A stretch of DNA of 64,000 bases, from assembly GCA_002269645.1 (NCBI GenBank), contig NIVC01001265.1:186001-250000 (forward strand). The letters are read 5' to 3'. Below, one piece after another: positions 4,073-57,219 of this stretch. The translations under genes and the position numbers were made by a program. How positions within the stretch are numbered: the first letter of the stretch is position 1; each line of letters opens with the position of its first letter. The DNA is from Macrostomum lignano. Lineage: Eukaryota. The notes under the pieces were generated by a model. That model was given only the letters and a program-made list of their open reading frames with translations, was not told where the DNA came from and searched no databases.

Positions 4073-4191
4073 TGGAAGCTGATTGAGAGAAATTTTTGAT
4101 TGACCTTTTTTACTACTGTTTCATTCTGTATGACCGGTGCGTGTTCTACATCGGTTCGTGCTGATGTTTTACTAGCGGGGGGTAGAGATAT

Positions 4192-5165
4192 GAGTGAGTG
4201 AGTGAGTGAGTGAGTGAGTGAGTGAGTGATGAGTGAGTGAGTGAGTGAGTGAGTGAGTGAGTGAGTGAGTGGGTGAGTGAGTGGGTGAGTGGGTGAGTGA
4301 GTGAGTGAGTGAGTGAGTGAGTGAGTGATGAGTGAGTGAGTGAGTGAGTTAGTGAGTGAGTGAGTGAGTTAGTGAGTGAGTTAGTGAGTGAGTGAGTTAG
4401 TGAGTGAGTGAGTGAGTGAGTGAATGAGTGAGTGAGTGAATGAGTGAGTGATGAGTGAGTGAGTGAGTGAGTTAGTGAATGAGTGAATGAGTGAGTGAGT
4501 GAGTGAGTGAGTGAGTGAGTGAGTGAGTGAGTGAGTGAGTTAGTGAGTGAGTTAGTGAGTGAGTGAGTGAGTTAGTGAGTGAGTTAGTGAGTGAGTGATC
4601 GAGTGAGTGAGTGAGTTAGTGAGTGAGTGAGTGAGTGAATGAGTGAGTGATGAGTGAGTGAGTGAGTGAGTGAGTGAGTGAGTGAGTGAGTTAGTGAATG
4701 AGTGAATGAGTGAGTGAGTGAGTGATGAGTGAGTGAGTGAGTGAGTGAGTGAGTTAGTGAGTGAGTGAGTTAGTGAGTGAGTGAATGAGTGAATGAGTGA
4801 GTGAGTGAGTGAGTGAGTGAGTGAGTGAGTGAGTGAGTGAGTGAGTGAGTGAGTTAGTGAGTGAGTTAGTGAGTGAGTGAGTGAATGAGTGAATGAGTGA
4901 GTGAGTGAGTTAGTGAGTGAGTTAGTGAGTGAGTGAATGAGTGAGTGAGTGAGTGATGAGTGAGTGAGTGAGTGAGTGAGTGAGTTAGTGAGTGAGTGAG
5001 TTAGTGAGTGAGTGAATGAGTGAATGAGTGAGTGAGTGAGTGAGTGAGTGAGTGAGTGAGTGAGTGAGTGAGTGAGTGAGTGAGTGAGTGAGTGAGTGGG
5101 TGAGTGAGTGAGTGAGTGAGTGAGTGAGTGAGTGAGTGATCGAGTGAGTGGGTGAATGAGGAGTG
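4192..5165. repeat. (GAGT)n microsatellite
   Basis: ~1 kb tetranucleotide run just downstream of the Hex stop. Confidence 0.97.
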
Positions 5166-5621
5166 AATGATTTGTTAATTGTTCTCAAACTGTCAGTGAT
5201 TATTCACCTGTAGGTATCATTGTCAGCGCATTCTGCCTATTCCGATCACTTCACAAATCTAAAATTTTTCACCCTTCAAAAGCCAGTGTACCGTTTATTT
5301 TTCCTGCACACCTTGTCACATCGGAATTGATGCGCAAGGCCAAAAAACAAACTTTATCAAGTAAAACAATTTTATAACTACTGTATTATTGATTCAATTT
5401 ACTCGTACGTTTTCAATAATTTTTTATTTAGATTTCTTATCTGCAAAATAAAAATTTACGAAAAAATTAAAATGAAACGATTTTTGGTTTTTTAATTATA
5501 TCTTTTACTATTTAGCGCATAGGAATTTAAATTTAATTAACTAATTAAATATATTTTTCTATGACATTGCAGCAGGTTGATTGTGTGAAATTTGTTGGAA
5601 AATTGATTATTCGCGATAAAA

Positions 5622-8524
<2,903 letters not shown>

Positions 8525-8571
8525 CCCATCTACAAACGTACACAGGTACACACCCCTCCCAATGCCTGCAG

Positions 8572-9478
8572 TTGTACAACAGCGACAAGCACATCCGCCT
8601 TCCAGAGTTTGATAACTACGCCAACTACGAGAGTAAGTCACTAAAATCATGGTAAATAAGGGTAGAAACTAAACTAGACTGTCTACTACCGAGTAGCGAG
8701 TCACGGATATAATCAGAACTTTATATTTATTTCCAAAATTTGTCAGGAATTTGTCACTATTAACTGATCCGATGTCAGCAACTGAATCGAATTCAACTGA
8801 GAGCCTTCAAAAACAAACCCGCAGCCCTGGCCAGTGTGAACTGGGAGGCCTTCTGCAAGGCCGCTGAGCGGGCCAAGGCCGAGCTGGAGGCCTGCGGACC
8901 GCCTGAGGAGGCCAAGCTGCTGCTGCTGGAAGGCATCCTGGTGCTCAACGAGGCCTCCGCTGACCGTCTGTGCCATGGGCGAGTCTTCATCCGGCTGGAT
9001 GACAGGGACGAGTTTCTGAGGAGGAGACGGTGAGAGGCTGAGATTGAGGCTGGGATTGTGATTGAGACTGAGATTGAGTTGAGACTGAGACTGAGATTGA
9101 GACTGAGATTAAGACTGAGACTGAGTTTTGATTTATGATGTTCGTTTTAAAATTTAGACCACTAATTTCGTAGCACTACTGATAGTAGAAAACTAGAAAA
9201 GGTGCACATTATTATCAATGGCACGTATGCTCACCCATGGCTCATCCAATTTGCTGTCGCAATGCAGCGAGCGCGTGTACGAGGACGACCCGGTGCCCGA
9301 CGGTTACGACACCGCAGTCACGTGGCCGATGTACGCTGAGCACTGCGCTGCTCTAGCGGGCCGGACTGACGTGACGTTTTTGAATGGCACCGAGTCGCTT
9401 GAGACTCTCTATGCCCAGCTCTGCGGGCTGCTGGACCGGCTGCTGGGCGGTGACCGGCGCTGCCTGACCTCTGTGCCT

Positions 9479-9484
<6 letters not shown>
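8572..9484 (+). pseudogene. Duplicated NRK exons 3-5 (8572-8632, 8825-9029, 9268-9484), lacking exons 1-2
   Basis: Copy offset by 1797 bp with identical ORF translations; lies downstream of the first copy's stop codon. Confidence 0.8.
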
Positions 9485-9870
<386 letters not shown>

Positions 9871-10504
9871 TTCATTCCTACCCGTTCTGTTCATTCTCGT
9901 GTACTCCGCACTGGTTTCAGTCTTGTCGCAGCCGAAGCTCTTTACTAATTGATCTGTTGACTGTTGCTGTGCTTATTAACTGAAATATTTGCTGCATGTC
10001 TAGATTTCTGCAGCAGGAATACGCTCGATTTTTTAAAAATAAAACTACAAGTGCAAATATAAATTCTTAAATAGGTTAATTTTTGTTAGTCCATGCTCGG
10101 ACGTTTAAAAACCAGTGTTTTTGCTGTTTTGTGTATCAGACCTTTTTAGTTAGAGAACTAACTTTAGTATCAGTGTCACCACTGACTAATGAGCCCTGAT
10201 TCATGTTTTACTGACTCATAGTTGCGTGGCTGACTGGATCAGGACAAGCTTGGCAAAACTATTCTTCACTAAGTTTAGCTGACATTAAGAATTCGGTATT
10301 GCTGACTCTGTCCATGCATGGCTCTGTGCTGTGTGTTTCTGACTTGGAAAAACTACATTTGCATGTCCTATTTTGCTCCTGTTGTTTTGAGCTTGCGGCA
10401 GACTGCAGAAGAGTGGAGGGAGAAAGATGAGAAAGAGGAGAAGAGTAGGGAGTTAAGAGAGTAGGAGGGGAGATTTTAGGGAAAAAAAGATAATAGTGAC
10501 GGAA

Positions 10505-11460
10505 AAAAGAGAGGAGAGGAGAGGAGAGGAGAGGAGAGGAGAGAAGAAGAAAGGAATGAGGAGGAGAGGAGAGGAGAGGAGAGTAGAGTAGAGTAGAGTA
10601 GAGTAGAGTAGAGTAGAGTAGAGTAGAGTAGAGTAGAGTAGAGTAGAAGACTAGAGTAGAGTAGATGAGAGGAGAGGAGAGAGGGAGAGGAGAGGAGAGG
10701 AGAGGAGAGGAGAGGAGAGGAGAGGAGAAGAGAGGATAGGAGAGGAGAGGAGAGGAGAAGAAAGGAATGAGGAGGAGAGGAGAGTAGAGTAGAGTAGAGT
10801 AGAGTAGAGTAGAGTAGAAGACTAGAGTAGAGTAGATGAGAGGAGAGGAGAGAGGGAGAGAAGAGGAGAGGAGAGGAGAGGAGAGGAGAGGAGAGGAGAA
10901 GAGAGGATAGGAGAGGAGAGGAGAGGAGAAGAAAGGAATGAGGAGGAGAGGAGAGGAGAGGAGAGTAGAGTAGAGTAGAGTAGAGTAGAGTAGAAGACTA
11001 GAGTAGAGTAGATGAGAGGAGAGGAGAGAGGGAGAGGAGAGGAGAGGAGAGGAGAGGAGAGGAGAGGAGAGGAGAGGAGAGGAGAAGAAAGGAATGGGGA
11101 GGAGAGGATGGGAGAGGAGAGGAGAGGAGAGTAGAGGAGAGGAGAGGAGAGGAGAGGAGAAGAAAGGAATAAGGAGGAGAGGAGAGGAGAGGAGAGGAGA
11201 GGAGAAGAAAGGAATGAGGAGGAGAGGAGAGGAGAGGAGAGGAGAGGAGAGGAGAGGAGAGGAGAAGAAAGGAATGAGGAGGAGAGGAGAGGAGAGGAGA
11301 GTAGAGTAGAGTAGAGTAGAGTAGAGTAGAAGACTAGAGTAGAGTAGATGAGATGAGAGGAGAGAGGGAGAAGAGAGGAGAGGAGAGGAGAGAGGGAGAG
11401 GAGAGGAGAGGAGAAGAAAGGAATAGAGAGGAGAGGAGAGGGTGGAGAAGAGAGGAGAGT
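10505..11460. repeat. Polypurine (GAGAG)n/(GAGTA)n pentanucleotide array with higher-order blocks
   Basis: Blocks such as GAAGAAAGGAATGAGG and GAAGACTAGAGTAGAGTAGATGAG recur. Confidence 0.93.
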
Positions 11461-12407
11461 AATAATGTCGTTATTACTAACGATACATTTCTTCTCCTCG
11501 ATTCAACACGTATTTAGCGGAGGATTTCTGATCGAACAGTGCAAGTTCGAAGAAAATCGGTTGGGCCATTTTTTCTCTAATCGATCACATAGATACCTAC
11601 CTACCGACAAACCATTTTTAGTATATTAGAAGCAGCTCCCAGAATTTTTTTTCTTTCTCAAACCTAAAAATGTCTAGTGAGCCCTTTCTTACTGTTGACT
11701 AAAACAGTGAAGAACCAATTGCAGGGCAGCTGGCTGCTTCTTCATCAACTTTGGTTTCTAGTCAAGACTGGTGCGGGGCGCGACCAGACCGGGCCGCTTT
11801 TGTTGTTTTTGGCGCACGTGTTGAGCGTGCAGCATTCGTATGCTTTCCTGCTTATCCTACCCTGCTGCCCGTTCGTCAGCTATTTTCTTATTAAATCCAC
11901 CTCCATAATGTGGACAAAAGCGACGGAGTGAAGGGCTGTTGAGTGCTGTTGACTCCTCTCTGTCTCTCCGCTCTCAATTGACGCAGCCATGGATGTCTTT
12001 AGCTAAAAGTCTGGACTAGAAAGGTTAATTAAAGTTGTCTAAAAATGCAAAAAGACTGTTATATTTCCTATGTTTTAGCTCAAGTCATAAACTCTGGGAG
12101 CGGAGCAGCTCAGCTGCAAACGCGTCTACGACTCACGGGGTCACGCCCTCTTGGTGGTGGTCGCTGTACACCCTGCAGCTCTTCCAGACTCTCACTCTTA
12201 TGGCACTCTCTGGCTTGTCTCAGGCAGGCAGACAGGCGGTCATATTCTGATGAGTCAGCAGCAATGAATGGAATTCATTATAATATAATAGCTCAAAGCA
12301 AGTTTTTAGTAGACTGCAGCAAGTCTACTGGGTCGCATGGTGGGGTTGGTGGGGGGGGTGCCTGCCTGCGGCAACCCACCGCACAGAGGGCTCAGGCTGC
12401 TGCAGTC

Positions 12408-12415
12408 TATAAATA
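12408..12415 (+). promoter_or_regulatory. TATA box (TATAAATA) of the secreted-peptide gene
   Basis: Consensus TATA ~125 nt upstream of ATG 12534 with no intervening ATG. Confidence 0.6.
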
Positions 12416-12533
12416 AACGGCCCCCTGTGGAGCGAAGCCGTAAGCCAATTCTTATAGACTCCCCAGGCGCATCGATTCGTCAGGAATTCGTGCAGCGGTG
12501 CTGATTCGTGAGCCGGAGATCTCTTGCTGCCAA

Positions 12534-12773
12534 ATGCGCTGCGTTTTGCTGTTGTCGCTGCTGCTGCTGCTGCTGCTGACGACGGCACTGACTGCCAAGC
12601 CGGTGTCTCAGCCAGCTGATGCTGACGACGGTCCGTTCGACGCCGCAGATGACGCCGACGAGCTGGCCGAGTTGAAACGGAAAGACATCCTGGAAGATTG
12701 CCTGCCCTTCCTAGCCAGCACTCTGAACGCTCACGACAGCATCCCGGACAAGTGTCGCGGTCTGCTGACCTGA
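12534..12773 (+). CDS. 79-aa secreted prepropeptide (signal peptide, acidic spacer, KR/KRK site, 29-30 aa two-Cys mature peptide); family unrecognised
   Basis: MRCVLLLSLLLLLLLTTALTA-KPVSQPADADDGPFDAADDADELAEL-KR-KDILEDCLPFLASTLNAHDSIPDKCRGLLT*; GC-rich codons, A at -3, upstream TATA, AATAAA at 12891. Confidence 0.8.
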   Translation: MRCVLLLSLLLLLLLTTALTAKPVSQPADADDGPFDAADDADELAELKRKDILEDCLPFLASTLNAHDSIPDKCRGLLT

Positions 12774-12890
12774 TTGAATTCTGACAACAATGGAATTTTG
12801 AGATCATCTATCAATAGCACACCAGTATCCAGCTGCTCCTGCTGAGTTGCATGTGCGCAATTCTCAAAGAGTTTGTATAAAAATGTGCTA

Positions 12891-12896
12891 AATAAA
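12891..12896 (+). terminator. Polyadenylation signal AATAAA of the peptide gene
   Basis: Canonical hexamer ~118 nt after the stop. Confidence 0.55.
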
Positions 12897-13249
12897 ACTG
12901 TGTAATTAAAATGAAAAATTTATCCAATAATCGATCGGTCTTCGTTATGCTACTTACAGTTGCGTAGAAGTAGTATGCGTAACATTTTTGCTTTTTTGTT
13001 AAGGGCCGTAGTTGCATGACCTTCAGATGCACGCACCGCACAATATAAAAATTTTAATACTACTGTACATGTATCTCCTTCTTACTACTTACGAGTAGTA
13101 GTGTATATCGTGTATTATCGGCGAAATTGGTATGTGTGTACCATGAGAGGGAGATTTTGCTGTTGTTGTATCCGAAAGGAAAGCTCCGCAGAAAATCTAC
13201 AATTTTCATCATCTTGAAGGTTATCCACTGAAAAGTAACGTAAAGTTAA

Positions 13250-13850
13250 CGGAGAGGGAGGGGAGAACAGAGAGGGAGAGGGAAAGAGAGGGGGAGAGGA
13301 GAGAGTGTGAGGGGAGATGAGAGTGTGAGGGGAGATGAGAGTGTGAGGGGAAGGGAAGAGGGAGAGTGAAGAGACAGGAGAGGGCAGAGGAGAGGAGATA
13401 AGTGAGGGGAAGGGGAGAGGGAGAGTGAAGAGACAGGAGAGGGCAGAGGAGAGGAGATGAGTGAGGGGAAGGGGAGAGGGAGAGTGAAGAGACAGGAGAG
13501 GGCAGAGGAGAGGAGATGAGAGAAAATGAGAGAGGGAGAGGGAGAGTGAAGAGACAGGAGAGGGCAGAGGAGAGGAGATGAGTGAGGGAGAGGGAGAGTG
13601 AAGAGACAGGAGAGGGCAGAGGAGAGAAGATGAGAGAGGGAGAGGGAGAGTGAAGAGACAGGAGAGGGCAGAGGAGAGGAGACGAGTGAGGGGAAGGGGA
13701 GAGGGAGAGTGAAGAGACAGGAGAGATCAAGCAGAGGAGAGGAGATGAGAGAGGGAGAGTGAAGAGACAGGAGAGGGGAATAGGAAAGGAGAGAGGGTGA
13801 GGGCAAAGAAGAGAGTGAGATGGTAAGAGTAGAGGGTGAGAGAGAAGAGG
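13250..13850. repeat. Polypurine minisatellite (GAGGGAGAGTGAAGAGACAGGAGAGGGCAGAGGAG...)
   Basis: Direct reading. Confidence 0.9.
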
Positions 13851-14772: not shown

Positions 14773-15072
14773 TGTGCCAAGATGATGGCGCCCTATAAGA
14801 GTGCCAAGATGATGGCGCCCTATAAGAGTGCCAAGATGATGGCGCCCTATAAGAGTGCCAAGATAATGGCGCCCTATAAGAGTGCCAAGATGATGGCGCC
14901 CTATAAGACGCCCTATAAGAGTGCCAAGATGATGGCGCCCTATAAGAGTGCCAAGATGATGGCGCCCTATAAGAGTGCCAAGATGATGGCGCCCTATAAG
15001 AGTGCCAAGATGATGGCGCCCTATAAGAGTGCCAAGATGATGGCGCCTATTAAAGTGCCAAGATGATGGCGC
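14773..15072. repeat. 27-bp minisatellite (AGTGCCAAGATGATGGCGCCCTATAAG)
   Basis: Tandem units; source of the SAKMMAPYK pseudo-ORF. Confidence 0.95.
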
Positions 15073-28500: not shown

Positions 28501-30492
28501 TTCTCTAACTGCTTTCTACCTGCCGCTCACCCCTCCCTCTAACTGCTTCCTACCTATCTCTCACCCCTCCCTCTAACTACTTCCTACCTGCCGCTCACCC
28601 CTCTCTCTAACTACTTGCTACCTGCCGCTCACCCCTCTCTCTAACTGCTTCCTATCTGCCGCTCACCCCTCTTCTCTAACTGCTTTCTACCTGCCGCTCA
28701 CCCCTCTCTCTAACTGCTTCCTACCTGCCGCTCACCCCTCCCTCTAACTGCTTCCTACCTGCCGCTAACCCCTCTCTCTAACTACTTCCTACCTGCCGCT
28801 CACCCCTCTCTCTAACTGCTTCCTATCTGCCGCTCACCCCTCTTCTCTAACTGCTTTCTACCTGCCGCTCACCCCTCCCTCTAACTGCTTCCTACCTATC
28901 TCTCACCCCTCCCTCTAACTACTTCCTACCTGCCGCTCACCCCTCTCTCTAACTACTTGCTACCTGCCGCTCACCCCTCTCTCTAACTACTTGCTACCTG
29001 CCGCTCACCCCTCTCTCTAACTGCTTCCTACCTGCCGCTCACCCCTCCCTCTAACTGCTGCCGCTAACCCCTCTCTCTAACTACTTCCTACCTGCCGCTC
29101 ACCCCTCTCTCTAACTGCTTCCTACCTGCCGCTCACCCCTCTCTCTAACTACTTCCTACCTATCTCTCACCCCTCTCTCTAACTGCTTCCTACCTATCTC
29201 TCACCCCTCTCTCTAACTGCTTTCTACCTGCCTCTCACCCTCCTCCCTCCAATCGCGACCTGCCTGCACCTTCTCTCCCATGAATTTCCCTATTCTCCAC
29301 ATCCACCGTTTCCTTAGAAACAATACGAGCGTACATATAGTTCGGGACAATTCTGATCGAAAAAAGCGGTTTGCAAGTCACGAGTCTCGGCATCAGGTTT
29401 CCCTAGCAACCCCTACACCAGGCAGGACTGTCCGAGCTCCGAGCTTGAACAGACCTCCAAAGCAGTACTCGTACAGCCCTGCCAATTAGCGCAGTCTTAT
29501 TCGGGATGCTACTTTTGCCCGTCTCTCTGTCCTCCTCCTCCATAGTGATATTGCCAGCTGGCTCACCGGCGCCCCACAGACAGATCTCGTGATCAATGTA
29601 GGTCTCCTCGGCGTCCGTCCCGTCAGCTCCGGTCACCACGGCTGATCCGTACGCTCTCAGCCTGATGCCTGATAGTGGTGAATAAATAAGCAGTGAATTG
29701 TGAATGATCGGTGAATAGTGAATAATCGGTGAATGACGAATGGTTAATAATAGGTTAATGGTTAATAATCAGTGAATAGTTAATTAATCAGTGAATCGTT
29801 AATAATCAGTGAATGGTTAGTAATCAGTGAATGGTTAATAATCAGTGAATGTTTAATAATCAGTGAATGGTTAATAATCAGTGAATCGTTAATAATCAGT
29901 GAATGGTTAGTAATCAGTGAATGGTTAATAATCAGTGAATGTTTAATAATCAGTGAATCGTTAATAATCAGTGAATCGTTAATAATCAGTGAATCGTTAA
30001 TAATCAGTGAATGTTTAATAATCAGTGAATCGTTAATAATCAGTGAATCGTTAATAATCAGTGAATGGTTAATAATCAGTGAATGTTTAATAATCAGTGA
30101 ATGGTTAATAATCAGTGAATGGTTAATAATCAGTGAATGGTTAATAATCAGTGAATGTTTAATAATCAGTGAATGGTTAATAATCAGTGAATGTTTAATA
30201 ATCAGTGAATGGTTAATAATCAGTGAATGGTTAATAATCAGTGAATGGTTAATAATCAGTGAATGTTTAATAATCAGTGAATGGTTAATAATCAGTGAAT
30301 GATTAATAATCGGTGAATGGTTAATAATCGGTGAATGGTGAATAATCAGTGAATGGTTAACAATCGTTGAATCTCACTCTGAATGTGAATCTCCTCTCGC
30401 AGGTTGGCAACCAGCCTGCCGCTGACGCAGCCTCCGCCATAGAACACGGTCTCCCCGTTGTCAAGCAGAAGTTGAAACTCAACAAACGGCAT
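22778..30492 (-). CDS. Alpha-arrestin (ARRDC-like, ~356 aa); exons 30492-30378, 29668-29567, 27975-27737, 25979-25782, 24042-23784, 22935-22778 (alternative ATG at 30516)
   Basis: Continuous spliced frame with GT-AG introns. Arrestin_N motifs VFYGGGCVSGRLV, IRLRAYG, EETYIDHEICLWG, HQFPFRLRLPPDCPPS; Arrestin_C motifs YSAGEAVQVDI, CSLVSVAYFI. AATAAA on the minus strand at 22750-22745. Confidence 0.88.
22970..23648. repeat. 45-bp higher-order repeat (22+23-bp monomers), arrestin intron 5
   Basis: TCTAGTCACCCCAATGGCTGTT alternates with TCTAGTCATTCCCAATTGCTGCT. Confidence 0.95.
24050..25565. repeat. (GATT)n/(GGAT)n microsatellite, arrestin intron 4
   Basis: Direct reading; source of the NQSI ORFs. 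Confidence 0.97.
26078..27700. repeat. 16-bp minisatellite (GAATATTCTGGTTTGT), arrestin intron 3
   Basis: About 100 tandem units. Confidence 0.97.
28012..29240. repeat. 34-bp minisatellite (CTAACTGCTTCCTACCTGCCGCTCACCCCTCTCT), arrestin intron 2
   Basis: Tandem units. Confidence 0.95.
29740..30362. repeat. 18-bp minisatellite (AATAATCAGTGAATGGTT), arrestin intron 1
   Basis: Tandem units. Confidence 0.95.
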
Positions 30493-30974: not shown

Positions 30975-32661
30975 TGAGACCGAGATGAGGATCAGAGACT
31001 GGGATCGAAGATGAGGATCAGGGACTGGGATTAGAGATGAGAATCAGGGACTGGGGTATACATGAGGATCAGGAACTGGGATTAGAGATGAGGATTAGAG
31101 ACTGGGATTATAGATAAGGATCAGGGTGAATCTCTGATCAGGGTGAATGTGGGATTAGAGATGAGGATCAGACTGGGATTATAGATGAGGATCAGGGACT
31201 GGGATTAGAGATGAGGATCAGACTGGGATTATAGATGAGGATCAGGGACTGGGATTATAGATAAGGATCAGGGACTGGGATTAGAGATGAGGATCAGACT
31301 GGGATTATAGATGAGGATCAGACTGGGATTATAGATAAGGATCAGGGACTGGGATTAGAGATGAGGATCAGACTGGGATTAGAGATGAGGATCATACTGG
31401 GATTAGAGATGAGAATCAGACTGGGATTAGAGATGAGGATCAGACTGGGATTAGAGATGAGAATCAGACTGGGATTAGAGATGAGAATCAGACTGGGATC
31501 GGAGATGAGGATCAGACTGGGATTAGAGATGAGGATCAGACTGGGATTATAGATGAGGATCAGGGACTGGGATTATAGATAAGGATCAGGGACTGGGATT
31601 AGAGATGAGGATCAGACTGGGATTATAGATGAGGATCAGACTGGGATTATAGATGAGGATCAGGGACTGGGATTAGAGATGAGGATCAGACTGGGATTAT
31701 AGATGAGGATCAGACTGGGATTAGAGATGAGGATCAGACTGGGATTAGAGATGAGAATCAGGGGCTGGGATTAGAGATGAGGATCAGGGACTGGGCTTAG
31801 AGATGAGGATCAGACTGGGATTAGAGATGAGAATCAGGGGCTGGGATTAGAGATGAGGATCAGGGACTGGGCTTAGAGATGAGGATCAGACTGGGATTAG
31901 AGAAGAGGATCAGGGACTGGGCTTAGAGATGAGGATCAGACTGGGATTAGAGATGAGAATCAGGGGCTGGGATTAGAGATGAGGATCAGGGACTGGGATC
32001 GGAGATGAGGATCAGGGACTGGGCTTAGAGATGAGGATCAGGGACTGGGATCGGAGATGAGGATCAGGGACTGGGCTTAGAGATGAGGATCAGACTGGGA
32101 TCGGAGATGAGGATCAGGGACTGGGATTAGAGATGAGGATCAGACTGGGATCGGAGATGAGGATCAGGGACTGGGCTTAGAGATGAGGATCAGGGACTGG
32201 GATCGGAGATGAGGATCAGGGACTGGGCTTAGAGATGAGGATCAGGGACTGGGATCGGAGATGAGGATCAGGGACTGGGCTTAGAGATGAGGATCAGACT
32301 GGGATCGGAGATGAGGATCAGGGACTGGGATTAGAGATGAGGATCAGACTGGGATCGGAGATGAGGATCAGGGACTGGGCTTAGAGATGAGGATCAGGGA
32401 CTGGGATCGGAGATGAGGATCAGGGACTGGGCTTAGAGATGAGGATCAGGGACTGGGCTTAGAGAAGAGGATCAGACTGGGATCGGAGATGAGGATCAGG
32501 GACTGGGCTTAGAGATGAGGATCAGGGACTGGGATCGGAGATGAGGATCAGGGACTGGGCTTAGAGATGAGGATCAGGGACTGGGATCGGAGATGAGGAT
32601 CAGGGACTGGGCTTAGAGATGAGGATCAGGGACTGGGATCGGAGATGAGGGATCAGGGACT
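30975..32661. repeat. 24/26-bp minisatellite (GATGAGGATCAG[GG]ACTGGGATTAGA)
   Basis: Tandem units with length polymorphism. Confidence 0.95.
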
Positions 32662-33748
32662 GCGATGGTCATGAGTACTGACATCTAGCAACCTGTGGGA
32701 GCATCGAGGACAATGAACCTGACACAGAAACATAGGCCATAAGAGTATAGCTACAACAGCCTGCAGAATTGGATGCCGCACAGATGACAAGGCGATGAGG
32801 CAACTGCGCCAAGGAAAGTTTTGCCTGGTGTATTTTTCTAAACTATTTTTTAAAGCAGTTCATACTGATGAATGACAGAGATCTGCCGACACGCTACGAT
32901 TAACAACAAATCGACGATGCTGAACAGGTGACAATTTGATATAAATAAAGGCAGGCAAGTATAGCATAAAATAGGTAATATTTGGCTGGGGGCGCGTATT
33001 TGTTAACAAATGTTTTAATAAAAAAGACAATTCAAGTACACGTGCAGGCGCACCATCCGTTTATAAGTAGATATTTATAGATATGTATGCGAATGTGTGA
33101 ATGGCGATGAGACTGCTCAGATATAGGCTAAGGTAAATGGGCGTGTGCTCAACTACAAAAAAGTTTAACGACAAAGGAAAGAAGCCATCCATTCAGCGTC
33201 CGCTCTCGAGGCGATCATTTCGGGTGGGAGGGGGAATTTAAAAACGACGAAGAAAAAACAAATCCGACCAGCTGCGACAACAAATCATTGATTTTAATAG
33301 CAATATTTATAATAGAATAAGAGACTACTAACGCGCGCTGTTTTGGCTACTGCAAGTAGCAAAGTGAAACTATGCATATATAGAGACCGAAATCCGATGA
33401 AATGAATGAGCGAATTAATTAATTAATTAGTTATGCACGATTACTGCGGCTGATAGTACATGCCAGATTATAAATCGATGCGAGCAGCTTAGTACAGTAA
33501 AGCGGCTAACGAAATCGTGATTAAAATGGGACGCGCGGGACGGGACGGCTTTTAATATAGAAGCTCCGTGCTAAAAAAAGACATGTAGCACAGAAGGCAG
33601 GTGAGCGAGCAATATACCTTGTGGATGTGTATATATATAATATCAAGCAATATTTTGGCCGCACAAAGTCAAGCGCATTTCAAGCGGACAGGTTATCAAT
33701 TATTAGGGAGTCCAGGTATTAGTTAATCCACACCAACTCAAGTCTGCT

Positions 33749-36710
33749 TTAAGAGGACCGATTCGGATCGGCCATCGGCTGCAGCGGCATCTGCAGCAGC
33801 TGCGGCACGGCAGCGGGAGCTCCGCCTACAGCCTGGGAGACCTCGGAGTCGTCGGCAGAGTCCAGGCTGACAATGCGAGCCACCGGAGCTGGCGGGGGCG
33901 GCGTGGCCAGCTGAGGCTGGTGCTGGTTGAGCAACACGGGGAAGGCGCGGACAGGGCAGAGCACAGGCGGGCTGCCGTAGCAGTAACCTCCGGGCGCGGC
34001 GGGGGAATAGGCGGCTGCCAGCTGCTGCGGCTGCTGCTGGCTGTACAGCTGTCCGCAGTCGAACTCCACCGACTTAAGAGGGGGAAGGCGAGCATTTTTG
34101 CAGTTGGGCTAATTTTTAGCGCTAGCGAGACAGCCCTTGGGGAAATGAAGGGTGGAGATTTAGGTAGGGAGACACTGGGAATAGCGAGACCAGAATGAAC
34201 GGGTGGAGTTGAAGGGTATTATTGAAGGGGCGGGAATGAAGGCGGGAATGAAGGCGGGAATGAAGGGACGGAAATGAAAGGAAGGGATTAGGGGGGTGGG
34301 AATGAATGCGATGGGAATGAAGGGACGGGACGGGATTCATGGAAATGAAAGATTAAGTGAAGAATTAAGGGATGCGGTTGGTAGAGAAGGCTAAAGAGTC
34401 GTGAAGGGAGGAATTGTGATGGGATGAGTGTTATGAACGTCAGGCTTACCTCGTTAGCGTAGGACTGGTCTGTACAGCTGGGGTCAGTGCCATAGTCGCT
34501 GGTGGCACTCAGGAAAGGGCCCGGTCCTCCGCCGTCTGGGTAGCCTGCGGCGGGCGTCCTGTTGGCAGTGAGCGGGCTGCTGTAGTAAGGCAGGGCGCCG
34601 CCTCCACCGCCAGCCATGGGGCCGAAAGCCGAAGTCGAATAATAGGCAGCGCTTGACGGTGTGTTGCTCTGCAAATGGAGGGAAAAATTAAAGCGCTACA
34701 CAAAGACTGGTACAGAGACAGGTGCTACACAAAGACTGGTACAGAGACAGGTGCTACACAAAGACTGGTACAGAGACAGGTGCTACACAAAGACTGGTAC
34801 AGAGACAGGTGCTACACAAAGACTGGTACAGAGACAGGTGCTACACAAAGACTGGTACAGAGACAGGTGCTACACAAAGACTGGTACAGAGACAGGCGCT
34901 ACACAAAGACTGGTACAGAGACAGGTGCTACACAAAGACTGGTACAGAGACAGGTGCTACACAAAGACTGGTACAGAGACAGGCGCTACAAAGACTGGTA
35001 TAGAGACAGGCGCTAAAAAGACTGGAGAGACAGGCGCTATAAAGACTGGTATAGAGACAGGCGCTAAAAAGACTGGAGAGACAGGCGCTATAAAGGCTGG
35101 TATAGAGACGCGCTATAAAGGCAATTGGCATAGGCACAATGACTGTACACAAATACTTGTAGATATACTACAAAGCAGTTTAATTAAAGAAATCAACTCA
35201 CAAGGGCCGGACTTGGCGACTGTTGCTGATGATGATGATGACCGATTGAACTGGGCCACACTGCGGCAGCAAACTGAGCCGGCAGGCACATCAGCTGGGC
35301 CGCGGTGGCTGCCGACATACCGTGGTGATTTGGAGGGGCACCGTTGACGGCGGCTGCGGCGGCAGCTGCGGCAGCAGCGGCGGCGGTGGTCATAGTGTAG
35401 GGCTGCCCGTAGCCGGCTGGATAATGCAGATCACCGCCACCGCCACCCAGAGCCAGCTGGTGCTGCTGATGATGGTAGTGCTGGTAGAGGCTGCCGGGGA
35501 TGTGGAACACGGCCATACCGTTCTGGTAGGTGTATGGCACCGAGCCGGCCGTGAAGAACACGCCATTGCTGTTGGAGTCGGGCCTGTGGTACAGGGGCTG
35601 CACGCCAGGAGGCGGTCAGAGCAGGGAGGTCACTATTACTCTCGCCGTTTACTCAAGCTCAGAAAATTTTGAGACATTGAAAATTAACTTATTTACTCAT
35701 GTAAAAGAGGCAGGAGGTGATTGATGTGTGCTTTGATGGAAGTTCTAGCAAAGGAAACTACTTTTTAAAAAAAATTACATGTAAAGGGATTGCAGTCTAG
35801 TGGTTAGAGCATCGGATTCACGATTTAAAGGTTGGGGGTTCGATTCCCGATCCCACTAGAACAATTTGTGTCCTTAAGCAAGACACTTAACTCTGCATTG
35901 CTGCAGTTCACCCAGCTGTAAAATGGGTGCCAGCATCAGCTGGGGTAATTGAGGGTGTGTGTGGCGGGCGACCCCCCAGTCCTTGGACTGAACAGCCGTA
36001 TGCAGCCTTCAGATGCGCCGCGCAATAGCTGCGACTGAGCTGTCGGTTGCACACCTGCCCATTGGAGCAGGTGTGATCAATCATTACTAGTAACTAAATG
36101 TAAACAGCAAACTAACTTAGACTGAAATGTACTAACGAGATGCCGAGGCGCTTTACAAATTCAAGACAGCGATAGTTACTCTGGCCGTTTACTCAAGTTA
36201 AAACTGCCCAGATTTAAAAATTCATAATAAACACTTGTCCAAATATTCAAGCAGCGAGTAGCTTACACTCTTTTTGATAGCCGGGCCGATGTTAAGCCGC
36301 CTAGATCGGAATACCAGGCCGTCCCGGGACTCGCGGTCCCTCCGAATGATTGAGTCGGCCAGCTCAGCCGACTCGAACGTAACAAATCCGTAGCCCTTGG
36401 ACGTGCCGCTCTTGTCCGCTATGATTTTCACGTCGCGCACTTCGCCAAGAGCGGAGAAGAATTCCATTAGCTCGGCCTCGGTGGCGCTAGAAGGTATGCC
36501 GCCAACGAACACTCGATTAGGGATTAGAGTGCCGCCGAGTTCAGTATTGGCTGCTGTCGATACGGGAGTCCCTGGCATGGCGACAATGGCCGTTGTTGAC
36601 GCCGTGGGAGCTGCTGACGTGGTGGTCGCAGCGTCCGACACAGACGGCGGTGAGACAGCTGGCGACTGCGGCGACGGCGCTTCGGTGGCGGTCAATTGAG
36701 TGCCGGACAT
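33749..36710 (-). CDS. boule: Boule (DAZ-family RRM protein, ~460 aa); exons 36710-36267, 35597-35202, 34668-34450, 34072-33749
   Basis: RRM GTLIPNRVFVGGI (RNP2)...SKGYGFVTF (RNP1)...LNIGPAIKK is DAZ/Boule-diagnostic; followed by PYTYQNGMAVFH, like the Boule PYTYHNGVAYFH motif. Phase-0 GT-AG introns. Probable 5'UTR intron 37327-36744. Confidence 0.92.
34695..35110. repeat. 29-bp minisatellite (ACAAAGACTGGTACAGAGACAGGTGCTAC), boule intron
   Basis: Tandem units. Confidence 0.95.
35786..36090 (+). mobile_element. tRNA-derived SINE with CORE-like domain, copy 1 (boule intron)
   Basis: A box TAGTGGTTAGAGC and B box GGTTCGATTCC; central TGTGTCCTTAAGCAAGACACTTAAC...CTGTAAAATGGG resembles the MIR/CORE domain; homologous copies at 46676 and 57965. 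Confidence 0.85.
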
Positions 36711-40030: not shown

Positions 40031-41428
40031 ATGCCACGATATCAAATCAGCACGCGACTTATCAGCCGCTGGCTATGGACTCTCCTTGTCTTGGCTTCCT
40101 GCACCACTTGTCTGTTGCTTTTAGTAGCGCACTCGAGCAGTAGCAGCGAGTCGGAAAAGCTGTTGCAAAACAAGCCACCAATATTTCTACTTTCTCCGCT
40201 AAGATCCCTACAGCAGCAGCATGATCAGAAGCTAAACGGCGAGTGGTTTCCTGACCAAGTGAGCCGAATTCCCTCCACCCAACCTCTTGCCAGCAGAGGT
40301 TTGAGTCTGGATTCGTCGGCTGGGAGCCATGTCCGCAGGCAACAGCAACAGAATCACCGGGCACGTACAGAAGCGGTTAAAAAAGCACCGATGCTAGAGC
40401 CGACACGACAACCGACAGCAGAGGCAGAAGCACCAACGCCAGTAGCAAAGCTTCATCCTGCGGACAGTGACAATGCAAGGCCGACACGACAATCAAGGGC
40501 ACCGTCTGGACAGCCAACGGCTGCAACGAGCTTCCGCGATCTCTGCTGGCAGCGCGGTTTTAGTCCGGCCTCTGGCAAGCCAATCAACCACACCCCGGAC
40601 GATTTCATCATTAGCGAGAGCCGCCTGTGCAGCGGTCGTCCTCTACTGCTGGCGCTTGTGCACAGCGAGTTCGGCTACCGAGAACGCCGCGACCTCATTC
40701 GCAGCACCTGGGCGTCGGTAAACAACATCAACGGGCACCGAATCGTAGTAGCATTTGTTGTTGGCGCCACAAGGACAGCTGAGCAGCAGGCAAAGCTGCA
40801 GGAGGAGAGCCAAGACGCGGCTGACCTTGTGCAGGTTCCGTGCAGTCCGGATGGCCAGCCCAGCGCGTCAACCTGCAAGGCGCTCTACGGACTCAGATGG
40901 GCAAGTCAGAACTGTGCAGGTGCCAGATTTTTGCTAAAGGTTGATGACTACGCGTTTGTGAACGTGTTTCAGTTAGTCACCTTAGTAACTGAACGCCTTG
41001 CTGACGCAAATCAGACATTTTATTGTCGAACAGCACCTGACGAGAATCGAATCACGCAATCAGGCTACTATTGGTACGTGAGCGAGGAGGAATGGCCGGA
41101 GGATAAGTACCCGCTGCACTGCAAAGGCTTAGCCTATCTAATGTCCGGAGATCTGCCTTCGCAGTTGGTTCAGTGCGCCGCCTGGCGGAACCTCCTTCAT
41201 CTAGAGGACATCTTCGTCACGGGCGTGCTGGGCAAAGCATTGCAGGCCAACTTTATGCACTGGCTCAGAGGCTGGGACTCCGACTGGCTGCATCCGAAAC
41301 ACGCCGGACCGGCTGTAGTCAGTGCACTGGTGCTGGCCACCCCAGAGGGTGCGCCGCTGCCCAATTTGCAACGGCGCGTCTGGAGAGCGGCTCTCCGTCA
41401 CAGCGCAGGACTTGCCGGGCTAGACTGA
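40031..41428 (+). CDS. GT31 beta-1,3-galactosyltransferase-like type II membrane protein, intronless CDS, 465 aa
   Basis: N-terminal TM segment and long stem; motifs LLLALVHS...RRDLIRSTW, FVVG, FLLKVDDYAFVNV (DxD-like), YPLHCKGLAYLMS, EDIFVTG. Confidence 0.92.
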   Translation: MPRYQISTRLISRWLWTLLVLASCTTCLLLLVAHSSSSSESEKLLQNKPPIFLLSPLRSLQQQHDQKLNGEWFPDQVSRIPSTQPLASRGLSLDSSAGSHVRRQQQQNHRARTEAVKKAPMLEPTRQPTAEAEAPTPVAKLHPADSDNARPTRQSRAPSGQPTAATSFRDLCWQRGFSPASGKPINHTPDDFIISESRLCSGRPLLLALVHSEFGYRERRDLIRSTWASVNNINGHRIVVAFVVGATRTAEQQAKLQEESQDAADLVQVPCSPDGQPSASTCKALYGLRWASQNCAGARFLLKVDDYAFVNVFQLVTLVTERLADANQTFYCRTAPDENRITQSGYYWYVSEEEWPEDKYPLHCKGLAYLMSGDLPSQLVQCAAWRNLLHLEDIFVTGVLGKALQANFMHWLRGWDSDWLHPKHAGPAVVSALVLATPEGAPLPNLQRRVWRAALRHSAGLAGLD

Positions 41429-54208: not shown

Positions 54209-55910
54209 AATACGCTGTCATGATGGTAAAAGTCAGCGTCACAGGGCGCGCTTCATGGCTTGGGCGCGAACAAAGGCCGCGCCACCGGCAGTGTCCGGGG
54301 CGCCGGCGTCAGCCAGCAGACAGTCGACATAACGCCGAGTTCGCGCTTGACCTCGCCGGTAGGGTGCCTGCAGCGTGAGCAGCAGCACCTCCTGCACCGG
54401 CTGTGGGCAGTACGACTCGGCGCGGATGAGATGGCCTGCGAGCTGGAGTCGCCGACGGCGCAGTAGATCACTTGGACGTGGCAGGCCAGCGCGGCGATAG
54501 AGTGCCGCGTTGGTGACTCGCTCGACGCCGATGTTGAAGGCGGCGCGCAGCAGACCAGCGTGCGCCGCATCGACTTGCTGTTCGAGTGAGTCCGTCAGCG
54601 TCCAGGTCTCGGCGTTGTACAGCAGGACGGTCTCGATTACCGCCTGGAACAGCGCCGCCCTCTGGCGGTCCGGTAGGGCCTCGGACTGCAGGACTGCCCT
54701 CACAGAACGAAAGGCAGCCCAGGCAAGCCCGCGGCGGCGTCGCAGGTCCTCGCGAGCGTCTGGAACCAGACCGCCGAGGTAGACGAAATGCTGACATCGC
54801 GGGAGTTCGGTCGCCTGCCCGTCAGCGCCTCGGCAAAATATTGCAGCCTCGATGTCGTCCGGCACGCAGAGCACAACGGTCTTCTGCGTGTTGACCACCA
54901 GGCCGACACTCGCCGCAACGGCAACCAGCCTGTCCAGCTGCCGTTGGGCGCCCTCGACGGTCGAGGACAGCAGGGCGAGGTCGTCGGCGTAGCCAAGCAC
55001 GCTGAGCCGCTTCTCCGGTTGACGTCGACCCACGCGTCGCTGCAGCAGAAAACCGTCGTCGTCGGTAGGAAGAGCAGTCCGCAGCACCCAGTCAAGCACC
55101 AGGACGAACAGGAACGGCGCCAGCGTATCTCCCTGAAGCACTCCGGAGGATGTCTCAAAGGAGTCCGATAGGCCGTCCGGTGTTGTCACAGCAGCTGTCG
55201 TATCACGGTACATCGCCATGATGGCGGAGATCAGCTGCTCAGGCACGTTGTACGCGCGGAGCACCATTGGAAGCACGGCTCTGACAACCGAGTCGAATGC
55301 CTTCTTGAAATCAATAAAGATATAGCCCTATAAAGATATGTCCTATAAAGATACAGGACATGGTGTCGGCCAACACCCGCTTCCGCAAGCCACTGAGCGG
55401 TCTCGCAACCTTCGTGGGCTGCAAGCGGAGGCGACGGAACGCGCGTGGCAGGAACGCAACCCGGAGACAAGCACAGCTCGACCACGTGCTCGTGCGTTTC
55501 CGTGAGCGTCGTCGCGCCGTCAACTGCCGAACCATCACGCCGCTGGCTCTGCGGTCCGATCACCGGCTCCTCATCTGCGACCTCAACCTTCGCGATCCGC
55601 TCTACCGTCCGCCGAAGCGGCCACCGCGGCGCTACTACCGCGCGCTCAGAGCCACCGATACGCAGCGTCGCTTTGCTAGCGCCTTTAACACCGCGCTGGG
55701 CGACAAGCGTGGAAGTGCCGAGTATGCGATAGTGTGCGCTGCAGTCAGAACCGCCGCGGAGCAAGCAGTCCCGATGATGCAACCGGCTCAACGTGGGCAG
55801 CCGGTCTGGCAGGACGACCCTGCGATTCAGGCAGCGAGGGAAGATCTGGAGAAGCTCCGCTTGAGCAGGCGACCAACCCGCGAGGCAGAGGCAGCTCTGG
55901 CAGCTGTCTA

Positions 55911-57219
55911 CGAGGGGCATACTGAAAGTTTTGAGATACACCAAAACCACAAATGTCTGAAGCAAAATTTTTGTCACAACTTTTCAAAGTAGTTGCCACC
56001 CACTTGTATGCATTTCCTCATCCGGTGAAACCACTGCGTCCAGGCTCCGGCCCACTGTTCTTCTGGCACTGCTGACACTACCCGCTCGAACTCGAATCTT
56101 GCTGTTTCAGGGCTCTCAAACCGAGTCCCACGCAGTTGGTTCTTCACCAAAGGGAAGAGAAAGAAGTCGCAGGGTGCCAGGTCAGGGGAATATGCGGGAT
56201 GCGTCACCAACTGGACTCCATTTTCAGCCAGAAATGCCAATGTTGCAGCAGCTGTGTGCGCACTGGCATTGTCGTGGTGCAGCAGCAGACCACGAAGTCC
56301 GGTGCGCGGCCGGCGTCTGCGCCACGCATCGAGCACGAGTGGCAGGCACTGGTTGATATACCAGTCGGCATTGACTGTCCACCTGTCTTGGAGCGCTACA
56401 GTCGCCAGGTGGCCAGCCTGGCTGAAGAAAGTCGCCACCATCTGCTTCCCGACGCTGCGGGCCCGCTTGACCTTCAATGGGGTGGCATCGTCCGGAAGGA
56501 GCCAAACTGCCGACTGCTGCTTGGTTTCCGGGTCGTACTGGTAGACCCAGGTCTCATCGCCTGTGATGATCTCCCAGCATCGCTTCGAGGCCCCAGAATC
56601 GAATCTTTCAAGCATAAACTCGCACCAACGCACCCTCTCCACTTTCTGGTCCTCCGTCAGGTTGTGGGGCACCCATCGGGCACACCGCTTGGAGGCTCCC
56701 AGCTTGTCGTGCAGGATGGTCGTAACCGCTGCCAATCCAATGCCGAGGGGCGTCTCTGATCTCGGCACAGGTCACTCGCCGGTCCTCGTCAATCATTCTC
56801 CAAACAGCAGCAATGTTTTCATCCGTGACTGTGGAAGCTGGACGTCCCGTCCGAGGCTCGTCATCAAGGCTGCTTCGGCCCCACTTACACTGACTGTACC
56901 AACGAAAAACTGTGGCACGTGAAGGGGCTTGGTCTCCAAAGGCAGCATGTAAACTTTCAACGCACTGCTCCTGCGTGAGACCTTTTCGCTGGTCATAAAC
57001 TATCATGGCACAAAAGTCGCAGTTTGTCAACTCCATTGGAGCAAGTACAGTTTGGTAGGGGGTATTGATTTTGAAGAGTGATTGTGAAAAATTGACAAAA
57101 GCGCGAAGGCTGAAAATTTATACCCAATCATCTTAAGGGTGGTAGAGTATGTACATAAAAATTTGTGCAGTTGTGACTTATGAGTCAACCATATCTCAAA
57201 ACTTTCAGTACGCCCCTCG
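55911..57219 (-). mobile_element. Full-length mariner (1309 bp, DD34D) with 28-bp TIRs and TA TSD; transposase 57036-55974 has one +1 frameshift near 56747-56750
   Basis: TIR CGAGGGGC(A/G)TACTGAAAGTTTTGAGATA; TA at 55909-55910 and 57220-57221; WVPHNL, TGDETW, HDNA-x-YSPDLAPCD with 34 aa between the last two catalytic Asp. Confidence 0.96.

What the first reader, a model, noticed from the sequence alone, without database searches (positions are those of the whole stretch)
12408..12896. Orphan prepropeptide gene: candidate novel neuropeptide, hormone or defensive peptide
Seen: a compact intronless unit (TATA 12408, ATG 12534, stop 12773, AATAAA 12891) encoding a 21-aa signal peptide, a highly acidic 26-aa spacer, a KR(K) convertase site, and a 29-30 aa mature peptide KDILEDCLPFLASTLNAHDSIPDKCRGLLT with a single C-x17-C pair and no amidation Gly. 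Known: the signal/acidic spacer/KR/mature layout is typical of prohormones, antimicrobial peptides and toxins. The ring size differs from calcitonin, allatostatin-C/somatostatin and natriuretic peptides, and I cannot assign a family. It lies ~2.6 kb upstream of the neural gene hbn. Inference: an undescribed signalling or secreted peptide.
Basis: partly seen in the sequence, partly recalled or inferred. Interest (0 to 1): 0.78.

Follow-up and report, generated by a model that had tools for sequence, protein, structure and literature searches.

The report
Orphan secreted peptide gene, flatworm
This is a real, compact gene of the flatworm Macrostomum lignano for a small, very acidic secreted protein laid out like a hormone precursor; it has no detectable relatives, one copy is already in GenBank as a hypothetical protein, and nothing yet shows it is a neuropeptide.

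Summary

The window is Macrostomum lignano contig NIVC01001265.1:186001-250000. The locus occurs three times in that assembly and the ORF is intact in all three. Only one copy carries a gene call: PAA59727.1, a hypothetical protein that UniProt auto-names 'Saposin B-type domain-containing'. I could not reproduce that label (no Pfam hit, hhalign probability below 0.1%, 2 of 6 cysteines).

A scan of 1.84 billion representative proteins found no homologue. Controls show the database holds no other Macrostomum species, so conservation within the genus is untested.

The case for a prohormone rests on one KR site, which 13% of shuffles produce. The peptide is anionic, which argues against an antimicrobial role. 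No expression data could be found.

Verdict: a genuine lineage-restricted secreted pro-peptide gene. Neuropeptide or hormone function is plausible but unproven, at about 0.3. Interest is modest.

The parts
12408..12415 (+). TATA box (TATAAATA), 126 nt upstream of the ATG; identical in all three assembly copies
   Evidence: sequence; no variable column within 12353-12420
12416..12533 (+). Core promoter and presumed 5' UTR. It has no upstream ATG, and there is a 1-bp C-run indel at 12421 between copies. The transcription start is inferred about 30 nt after the TATA box and was not measured.
12534..12773 (+). Intronless CDS of 79 aa including the stop codon: a secretory pre-pro-protein
   Evidence: intact in three copies
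12534..12596 (+). Signal peptide, residues 1-21. The h-region is encoded largely by a (CTG)7 run that is (CTG)6 in the other two copies. Cleavage after A21 or A18 is inferred from the -3/-1 rule.
   Evidence: Kyte-Doolittle 12-residue maximum of 3.45; CTG indel at 12557-12559
12597..12674 (+). Acidic Cys-free spacer, residues 22-47 (KPVSQPADADDGPFDAADDADELAEL), net charge -8. The N-terminal part is predicted unstructured.
12675..12683 (+). K48-R49-K50, the only basic cluster and the candidate PC1/PC2-type convertase site. There is no Arg at P4, so it is not a furin consensus.
   Evidence: shuffle frequency
12684..12770 (+). Predicted mature peptide D51-T79 (or K50-T79): DILEDCLPFLASTLNAHDSIPDKCRGLLT. 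C56 and C74 are spaced C-x17-C. It is predicted as a helix, a loop and a short helix, and it is anionic.
   Evidence: AF2, pLDDT 61-67, up to 80 over residues 52-61
12774..12896 (+). 3' UTR up to the AATAAA poly(A) signal at 12891-12896. No SECIS or other Rfam element was found.

Best explanation
A genuine, lineage-restricted gene of Macrostomum lignano that makes a small secreted pro-peptide. Shown: it is a self-contained, TATA-driven, intronless unit with its own poly(A) signal. It encodes a 79-aa product (78 aa in the two sister copies) with a classical N-terminal signal sequence. Inferred: the signal peptide is removed after A21 or A18, and a 58-aa, strongly acidic (net -8) pro-form enters the secretory pathway. 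Its C-terminal 30-35 residues fold into a small helix-loop-helix closed by a C56-C74 disulfide. In a cell that expresses a PC2/PC1-type convertase (M. lignano has a pan-neuronal PC2), cleavage at K48-R49, followed by trimming of the basic residues, would release a 29-30-aa anionic, non-amidated, disulfide-looped peptide of about 3.2-3.3 kDa. That peptide would act outside the cell as a signal: neuro- or endocrine, or transferred to a partner. The acidic N-terminal part would be a discarded spacer. My confidence differs by step: a real secreted-protein gene about 0.8, processing at KR about 0.4, a neuropeptide or hormone about 0.3.
For: The anatomy was read directly. It is the only one of 142 short ORFs in the window with a signal peptide, a TATA box and a poly(A) signal. 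GenBank holds a gene model for a 98%-identical paralogous copy, PAA59727.1, in an annotation built from RNA-seq-guided transcript assembly with experimentally set transcript ends. The ORF is intact in all three assembly copies. The only CDS differences are one synonymous change (12647 A/C) and one in-frame CTG indel. The 1264 nt of flank carry 13 substitutions and 7 indel events, most of them not multiples of three. GC3 is 0.75. The single basic cluster sits exactly at the boundary between the low-complexity acidic segment and the Cys-bearing segment that is predicted helical. A PC2 homologue that marks all M. lignano neurons is documented (PMC12435804).
Against: I could find no direct expression, cell-type or peptide data; searches for the gene ID in paper supplements, where any were held as text, found nothing. 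KR arises in 13% of shuffles. AF2 runs one continuous helix through the KRK site at low confidence, so the site need not be exposed. The two sequence lineages are only about 2% diverged, so the clean CDS is not statistically significant evidence of selection. The gene is called in only one of the three copies. There is no amidation signal, no known peptide motif and no conservation data. An anionic 29-mer is an unusual GPCR ligand.
Confidence: 0.4

Rival explanations
1. An unprocessed exocrine secretory product: a 58-aa, highly acidic small protein released by a gland cell (prostate or seminal fluid, cement or shell, adhesive, pharyngeal or epidermal mucus gland). It would act as such, and the KRK would be ordinary surface residues of a helix.
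For: It shares all the signal-peptide and gene evidence above. KR is not statistically unusual. AF2 puts KRK inside a continuous helix spanning residues 37-66. ELKR lacks the P4 Arg that furin in the constitutive pathway needs (sequence). From background knowledge, compact TATA-driven orphan genes for short secreted proteins are typical of flatworm gland and reproductive tissues, and reproduction-related genes evolve fast in Macrostomum (titles of PMC7336406 and PMC5977470, listed).
Against: There is no expression evidence for this either. The gene ID was not found in the held supplements of the reproductive and positional papers I searched. The sharp division into a Cys-free acidic half and a structured Cys-bearing half at the only basic cluster looks more like a pro-peptide design.
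Confidence: 0.3
2. A young or de novo ORF with little or no function. Triplet-repeat-rich DNA, with (CTG)n giving poly-Leu and GAC/GCC-rich sequence giving poly-Asp/Ala, happens to sit between promoter-like and poly(A)-like signals. It is transcribed at a low level and annotated, but it is not under selection.
For: No homologue turned up among 1.84 billion representatives. About half of the protein is low-complexity. The poly-Leu length varies between copies. The gene is called in only one of three identical-quality copies. The CDS-versus-flank difference is not significant.
Against: A canonical TATAAATA, a good start context, no upstream ATG, AATAAA 118 nt after the stop and a textbook n/h/c signal peptide together are improbable by chance. 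The non-repetitive C-terminal 30 residues are identical in all three copies, while the neighbouring non-coding DNA accumulated 1-4-bp indels.
Confidence: 0.17
3. A saposin-like (SAPLIP) lipid- or membrane-interacting protein, as the UniProt automatic name 'Saposin B-type domain-containing protein' implies; possibly a truncated half-saposin.
For: The UniRef name. A weak local resemblance of KDILEDCLPFLASTLNAHDSIP-DKCRGL to helices 3-4 of human saposin A, with C74 aligned to saposin Cys5. The stop codon TGA falls where Cys6 (C-x5-C) would lie (read from the sequence; speculative).
Against: Pfam SapB_1 and SapB_2 gave no hit at E<=10. hhalign against a 7-member SAPLIP alignment gave a probability of 0.06-0.07%. 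Smith-Waterman scores were within the shuffle range, z<=1.8. The secreted part has 2 cysteines, not 6. The structured part is about 35 aa, not about 80. The PDB fold search returned no saposin. No SECIS element supports read-through of the TGA.
Confidence: 0.04
4. An antimicrobial or defensive peptide precursor of the amphibian type: signal peptide, anionic propiece, KR, then the active peptide.
For: The layout is the same: a 21-aa signal, an acidic propiece, KR and a C-terminal peptide with a disulfide.
Against: The mature peptide is anionic (net -2 to -3, pI 4.4-4.8) and only modestly amphipathic (muH 0.33, reached by 7% of shuffles). In such precursors the acidic propiece neutralises a cationic peptide, and that logic is absent here. 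There is no sequence similarity to any AMP family.
Confidence: 0.05

Closest known systems
Single-copy C-terminal disulfide-loop prohormones (somatostatin / allatostatin-C / urotensin II / MCH type)
   Same: Overall design: signal peptide, Cys-free spacer, one dibasic site, and a single non-amidated peptide at the extreme C-terminus that is closed by one disulfide.
   Different: The ring is C-x17-C, against rings of roughly 4-10 residues in those families (background knowledge). None of their core motifs is present. The peptide is longer, anionic and predicted helical. No sequence homology was detected.
Natriuretic peptides
   Same: A large single-disulfide ring near the C-terminus of a pro-hormone.
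   Different: Their ring is C-x15-C with a conserved CFG...DRI...GLGC core (background knowledge). Here the spacing is C-x17-C, the motif is absent and the ring is predicted helical rather than a loop.
Amphibian skin AMP precursors (dermaseptin / brevinin superfamily)
   Same: Signal of about 22 aa, acidic propiece, KR, mature peptide; some have a C-terminal disulfide ('Rana box').
   Different: The mature peptide here is anionic, not cationic. There is no homology of the pre-pro region. The taxon is unrelated.
Saposin-like proteins (PROSITE PS50015; Pfam SapB_1/SapB_2), the public automatic label
   Same: Secreted, helical and disulfide-containing. There is a weak, non-significant local resemblance to the helix 3-4 region.
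   Different: It has 2 rather than 6 Cys and about 35 rather than about 80 structured residues. There is no profile match.
Flatworm orphan secreted peptide / prohormone genes (planarian spp/npp-type genes; Macrostomum prostate-specific seminal-fluid transcripts)
   Same: Short, lineage-specific, signal-peptide-bearing products with dibasic sites and no homologues outside the clade. This is the kind of gene it most resembles in practice (background knowledge; PMC5977470 and PMC4490696, listed).
   Different: No sequence link to any described member could be made. The peptide strings occur in no paper's full text.

Membership tests
Prohormone / neuropeptide precursor | Cleavable N-terminal signal peptide | tested here: met
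   M-R, a 13-residue Leu-rich h-region, then TTALTA. The 12-residue hydropathy maximum is 3.45, the highest of 142 ORFs. SignalP was not available, so the cleavage site is inferred.
Prohormone / neuropeptide precursor | Mono- or dibasic convertase site flanking the peptide | tested here: met
   K48-R49-K50. This is weak evidence: KR occurs in 13% and any dibasic pair in 43% of shuffles.
Prohormone / neuropeptide precursor | Expression in neurons or endocrine cells with the regulated secretory machinery (PC2, 7B2, CPE) | not testable with these tools
   No expression resource was reachable. The gene ID is absent from the supplements held for seven papers.
Prohormone / neuropeptide precursor | Mature peptide detected, or peptide and cleavage site conserved in related species | tested here: inconclusive
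   All three within-genome copies have identical mature peptide, KR and Cys, but they are only about 2% diverged. The databases lack other Macrostomum species: control genes show nothing between 100% identity and distant phyla.
Saposin-like proteins (SAPLIP) | Six conserved cysteines forming three disulfides (C-x2-C ... C ... C ... C-x5-C) | tested here: not met
   The secreted part has only C56 and C74; C3 lies in the signal peptide.
Saposin-like proteins (SAPLIP) | Significant match to SapB profiles | tested here: not met
   Pfam gave 0 families at E<=10. hhalign probability was 0.06-0.07%. Local alignment z<=1.8. PROSITE PS50015 itself could not be run.
Saposin-like proteins (SAPLIP) | Helical bundle fold of about 80 residues | tested here: not met
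   AF2 gives one long and one 4-residue helix, at pLDDT 61-67. The Foldseek PDB search returned no saposin and no hit at E<=0.001. The model is low-confidence.
Cationic AMP precursor (amphibian type) | Cationic amphipathic mature peptide | tested here: not met
   Net charge -2.2 or -3.2, pI 4.75 or 4.35; muH 0.33, not significant.
Somatostatin / allatostatin-C / urotensin / MCH and natriuretic peptide families | Family-specific ring size and core motif | tested here: not met
   C-x17-C read from the sequence. The ring sizes and motifs of those families are from background knowledge. There was no profile or HMMER hit.
Taxonomically restricted (orphan) gene | No detectable homologue outside the lineage | tested here: met
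   The word-index search found 4 candidates and 1 hit, the species' own copy. The full HMMER scan of 1.84e9 representatives found only that copy and a spurious acidic bacterial repeat protein. How far the lineage extends (species, genus or order) is unknown.

The most novel reading that the evidence does not exclude
The gene founds a previously unrecognised, Macrostomum-restricted family of anionic, helical, single-disulfide (C-x17-C) signalling peptides: a neuropeptide or hormone, or a peptide transferred at mating. It would have been assembled recently from triplet-repeat-rich sequence, with the (CTG)n run becoming the signal peptide and GAC/GCC-rich sequence becoming the acidic spacer.
Probability: 0.2. 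Interest if true: 0.55.

Novelty: new member of a known kind. Interest (0 to 1): 0.3.

Why it matters
If the peptide is processed and bioactive, M. lignano would gain a lineage-specific signalling peptide that can be tested directly. The species is transgenic and RNAi-tractable and is used to study regeneration and sexual conflict. The gene would also be a tidy example of a secretory gene built from repeat-derived sequence. In practical terms, the work shows three things: the UniProt 'saposin B-type' label on A0A267EFP7 is probably an artefact, two of the three genomic copies of the gene are unannotated, and the compact 126-bp TATA promoter could serve as a reporter driver once the expressing cell type is known. 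Otherwise it is one of the many orphan small secreted proteins found in any invertebrate genome.

Tried and rejected
1. Saposin membership, the public label. Pfam, hhalign, Smith-Waterman with shuffles and the cysteine count were all negative.

2. Selenocysteine read-through of the TGA, which sits where saposin Cys6 would be. No SECIS or any other Rfam match was found in 12300-13100.

3. Paralogues in the window. tblastn found none.

4. Antisense ORF 12325-12807 (160 aa, longer than the sense ORF). Rejected: it is Arg/Ala-rich junk, and 1-2-bp indels hit it at 12351-12352 and 12421 in the other copies.

5. PDB sequence search. It returned only chance matches of the acidic segment to LHC proteins, E>=0.23.

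6. Fold search. Nothing at E<=0.001.

7. HMMER hit P0002 (E 3e-4). Rejected as a compositional match to a bacterial seven-fold acidic Ig-like repeat protein.

8. Literature. The gene ID and three peptide strings occur in no full text. The gene ID occurs in no supplement file held as text for seven M. lignano papers.

9. Exact-sequence look-up of the 79-aa variant. It is not on record.

I reached the same loci through P0006 instead.

11. The control search with the galactosyltransferase used too strict an E-value cut-off (1e-20) to list distant homologues. It still shows that close congeners are absent.

Full report
**1. What is there**

- TATAAATA starts at 12408.
- There is no ATG between the TATA box and 12534, and the start context is ccaaaATGc.
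- The ORF is 240 nt and ends in TGA at 12771-12773.
- AATAAA lies at 12891-12896, 118 nt after the stop, and ATTAAA at 12905.

The product is MRCVLLLSLLLLLLLTTALTA / KPVSQPADADDGPFDAADDADELAEL / KRK / DILEDCLPFLASTLNAHDSIPDKCRGLLT. Its two cysteines, C56 and C74, are spaced C-x17-C. GC3 is 0.75.

To ask whether this is more than chance, I scored all 142 ATG-ORFs of 40-200 aa on both strands of the window.
- 2 have a signal-like N-terminus.
- 12 have TATAAA 40-250 nt upstream.
- 16 have AATAAA within 250 nt downstream.
- About 0.02 are expected to have all three. Exactly one does, and it is this ORF.

**2. Where it comes from**

The protein matches PAA59727.1 of Macrostomum lignano at 99% identity. 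That entry is BOX15_Mlig004493g2, a 'hypothetical protein'. UniProt lists it as A0A267EFP7 under the automatic name 'Saposin B-type domain-containing protein'.

An exact look-up of a single-exon galactosyltransferase elsewhere in the window placed the window at NIVC01001265.1:186001-250000 of assembly GCA_002269645.1 (Mlig_3_7). A 3.4-kb stretch was 100% identical.

Through the downstream homeobox protein (P0006) I recovered all three copies of the locus held in that assembly:
- L004, which is the window's own contig.
- L003, on NIVC01000980.1.
- L005, on NIVC01002238.1, the same contig as L001.

The peptide ORF is intact in all three. A gene is called only on L005. The window's own 79-aa variant is not on record.

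According to its paper, the Mlig_3_7 annotation was built from genome-guided RNA-seq assembly, with transcript ends set from trans-splicing and poly(A) evidence (PMC5730564). The existence of gene model Mlig004493.g2 is therefore indirect evidence of transcription. I could not see the reads themselves.

**3. Variation among the copies**

L003 and L005 are nearly identical to each other. The window copy differs from them by about 2%.
- In the 240-nt CDS there are two differences: a synonymous GCA/GCC change at 12647, and a (CTG)7 versus (CTG)6 length change in the signal peptide at 12557-12559.
- In the 1264 nt of flank there are 13 substitutions and 7 indel events of 1-4 bp.

Two of those indels, at 12351-12352 and 12421, fall inside the longer antisense ORF (12325-12807, 160 aa). 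That ORF is therefore not conserved.

The pattern fits a protein-coding sense strand. With so little divergence it is not statistically significant evidence of purifying selection.

**4. Homology**

- Pfam: no family at E<=10.
- Word-indexed search of 5.8 billion proteins: 4 candidates and 1 hit, the species' own copy.
- Full HMMER scan of 1.84 billion representatives: that same copy, plus one E=3e-4 hit. The second hit is a bacterial protein with a seven-fold acidic Ig-like repeat, so the match is compositional.
- PDB sequence search: only chance matches of the acidic segment.
- Paralogues in the window: none.

The negative result has limited reach. Two control genes from the same window, the galactosyltransferase and the homeobox gene, return only the M. 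lignano copies and then sequences from distant phyla. Nothing appears at the 70-95% identity expected of congeners. The databases evidently lack other Macrostomum species. A 30-residue peptide would also be undetectable at larger distances. 'Orphan' therefore means no family can be assigned. It does not mean the gene is demonstrably species-specific.

**5. The saposin label**

The label does not survive testing.
- The secreted part has two cysteines, not six.
- Smith-Waterman scores lie within the shuffle distribution.
- The Foldseek search of PDB returns no saposin.

The best local alignment places KDILEDCLPFLASTLNAHDSIP-DKCRGL on helices 3-4 of saposin A, with C74 on Cys5. The TGA stop falls where Cys6 would be. 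This is a curiosity, not evidence, and no SECIS element is present. My inference is that the PROSITE profile match behind the UniProt name is a borderline hit, possibly helped by the hydrophobic signal peptide. I could not run PROSITE.

**6. Physical character**

- After signal removal the product is 58 aa, 6.2 kDa, with net charge -8.
- The spacer alone carries -8.
- The putative mature peptide carries -2 to -3, with pI 4.4-4.8.
- Single-sequence AF2 is low-confidence (pLDDT 61 and 67, reaching 80 over residues 52-61). It predicts a disordered N-terminal part of the spacer, one helix over residues 37-66 that runs through KRK, a loop, and a short helix over 72-75.
- Amphipathicity of residues 51-67 is modest: muH 0.33, reached by 7% of shuffles.

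The anionic charge argues against a cationic antimicrobial design. In such precursors the acidic propiece exists to neutralise a basic peptide.

**7. How it most likely works**

Shown: the gene unit and the secretory pre-protein.

Inferred, in order:
1. The signal peptide is cleaved.
2. C56 and C74 are oxidised to a disulfide in the ER.
3. The pro-form is cleaved at K48-R49.
4. The basic residues are trimmed.
5. A 29-30-aa disulfide-looped peptide is released.

ELKR lacks a P4 Arg. It is therefore a PC1/PC2-type site rather than a furin site, and processing would depend on the cell type. M. lignano has a pan-neuronal PC2 (PMC12435804).

The KR motif occurs in 13% of shuffles and any dibasic pair in 43%, so the motif alone carries little weight. 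What favours a pro-peptide design is that the only basic cluster lies exactly at the junction between the Cys-free low-complexity half and the structured Cys-bearing half.

| Claim | My estimate |
|---|---|
| Real secreted-protein gene | about 0.8 |
| Processed at KR | about 0.4 |
| Neuropeptide or hormone | about 0.3 |
| Unprocessed exocrine gland product (including seminal fluid) | about 0.3 |
| Functionless young ORF | about 0.17 |
| Antimicrobial peptide | about 0.05 |
| Saposin-like protein | about 0.04 |

**8. Context**

The gene sits in a single-copy island between a (GAGAG)n microsatellite at 10509-11459 and a GA-rich minisatellite at 13331-13792.

Upstream, a beta-hexosaminidase gene ends near window position 4070.

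Downstream lies a three-exon paired-like Q50 homeobox gene of 213 aa, with exons at 15384-15507, 15774-16003 and 18081-18368. It has an FTIEGIL octapeptide. Its best outside matches are variously named Rx, Arx, hbn and otp, so 'hbn' is plausible but unproven. This adjacency says nothing about where the peptide gene is expressed.

**9. Novelty and score**

A compact orphan gene for a small secreted pro-peptide is a familiar kind of object in invertebrate genomes. One copy of this one is already deposited, though uncharacterised and probably mislabelled. It is a reasonable candidate for follow-up in a tractable model. No evidence obtained here lifts it above other such candidates. I rate it a new member of a known kind, with interest 0.3.

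Noticed in passing
window 12534-12773; L003 7124-7360; L005 6782-7018: The locus is present three times in assembly GCA_002269645.1 (NIVC01001265.1, NIVC01000980.1, NIVC01002238.1) and the ORF is intact in each. A gene is called only on NIVC01002238.1, so the window's copy and one other are unannotated.
   Followed up: yes
window 12557-12559: The poly-Leu core of the signal peptide is a (CTG)7 microsatellite that is (CTG)6 in the other two copies. The signal-peptide length therefore varies by triplet slippage.
   Followed up: yes
window 12325-12807 (-): The antisense ORF of 160 aa is longer than the sense ORF. It is Arg/Ala-rich and is disrupted by 1-2-bp indels in the sister copies, so it is not a gene.
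   Followed up: yes
window 15384-18368 (+): A three-exon paired-like homeobox gene of 213 aa, identical in all three copies (BOX15_Mlig028926g3). It has an FTIEGIL octapeptide and no OAR domain. Its closest named hits are Rx, Arx, hbn and otp, so its orthology is unresolved.
   Followed up: partly
window 14774-15072: Eleven copies of a 27-bp tandem repeat (GTGCCAAGATGATGGCGCCCTATAAGA), about 300 bp upstream of the homeobox gene's ATG. Each unit contains TATAAGA and ATGATGG. Their significance is unknown.
   Followed up: no
window 4191-11459: Long microsatellites: (TGAG)n at 4191-5170, (CTGT)n at 5991-6727, 7680-8524 and 9477-9776, and (GAGAG)n at 10509-11459. They make the spacer between the hexosaminidase 3' end (about 4070) and the peptide gene about 2.6 kb longer here than in the L001/L005 copy.
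   Followed up: partly
window 40031-41428 (+): A single-exon gene of 465 aa with a Galactosyl_T domain (Pfam E=7e-34). It also occurs in three copies (Mlig024910 g2 and g3 named in GenBank). I used it as an anchor to identify the contig.
   Followed up: yes
window 54239-57981: Fragments of reverse transcriptase (RVT_1) and of a DDE transposase/integrase on both strands, in a GC-rich block (GC 0.57-0.59). These look like decayed or nested mobile elements.
   Followed up: no
window 36222-36710 (-): An ORF with an RRM_1 domain (E=5e-16), probably an exon of an RNA-binding protein gene.
   Followed up: no
whole window: A very high tandem-repeat load: 46 TRF rows with score >=200, including arrays of 1.2-2.2 kb at 20528-22712, 24049-25570, 26080-27700, 28023-29249 and 30982-32666. 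Single-copy genes sit as islands between satellites.
   Followed up: no
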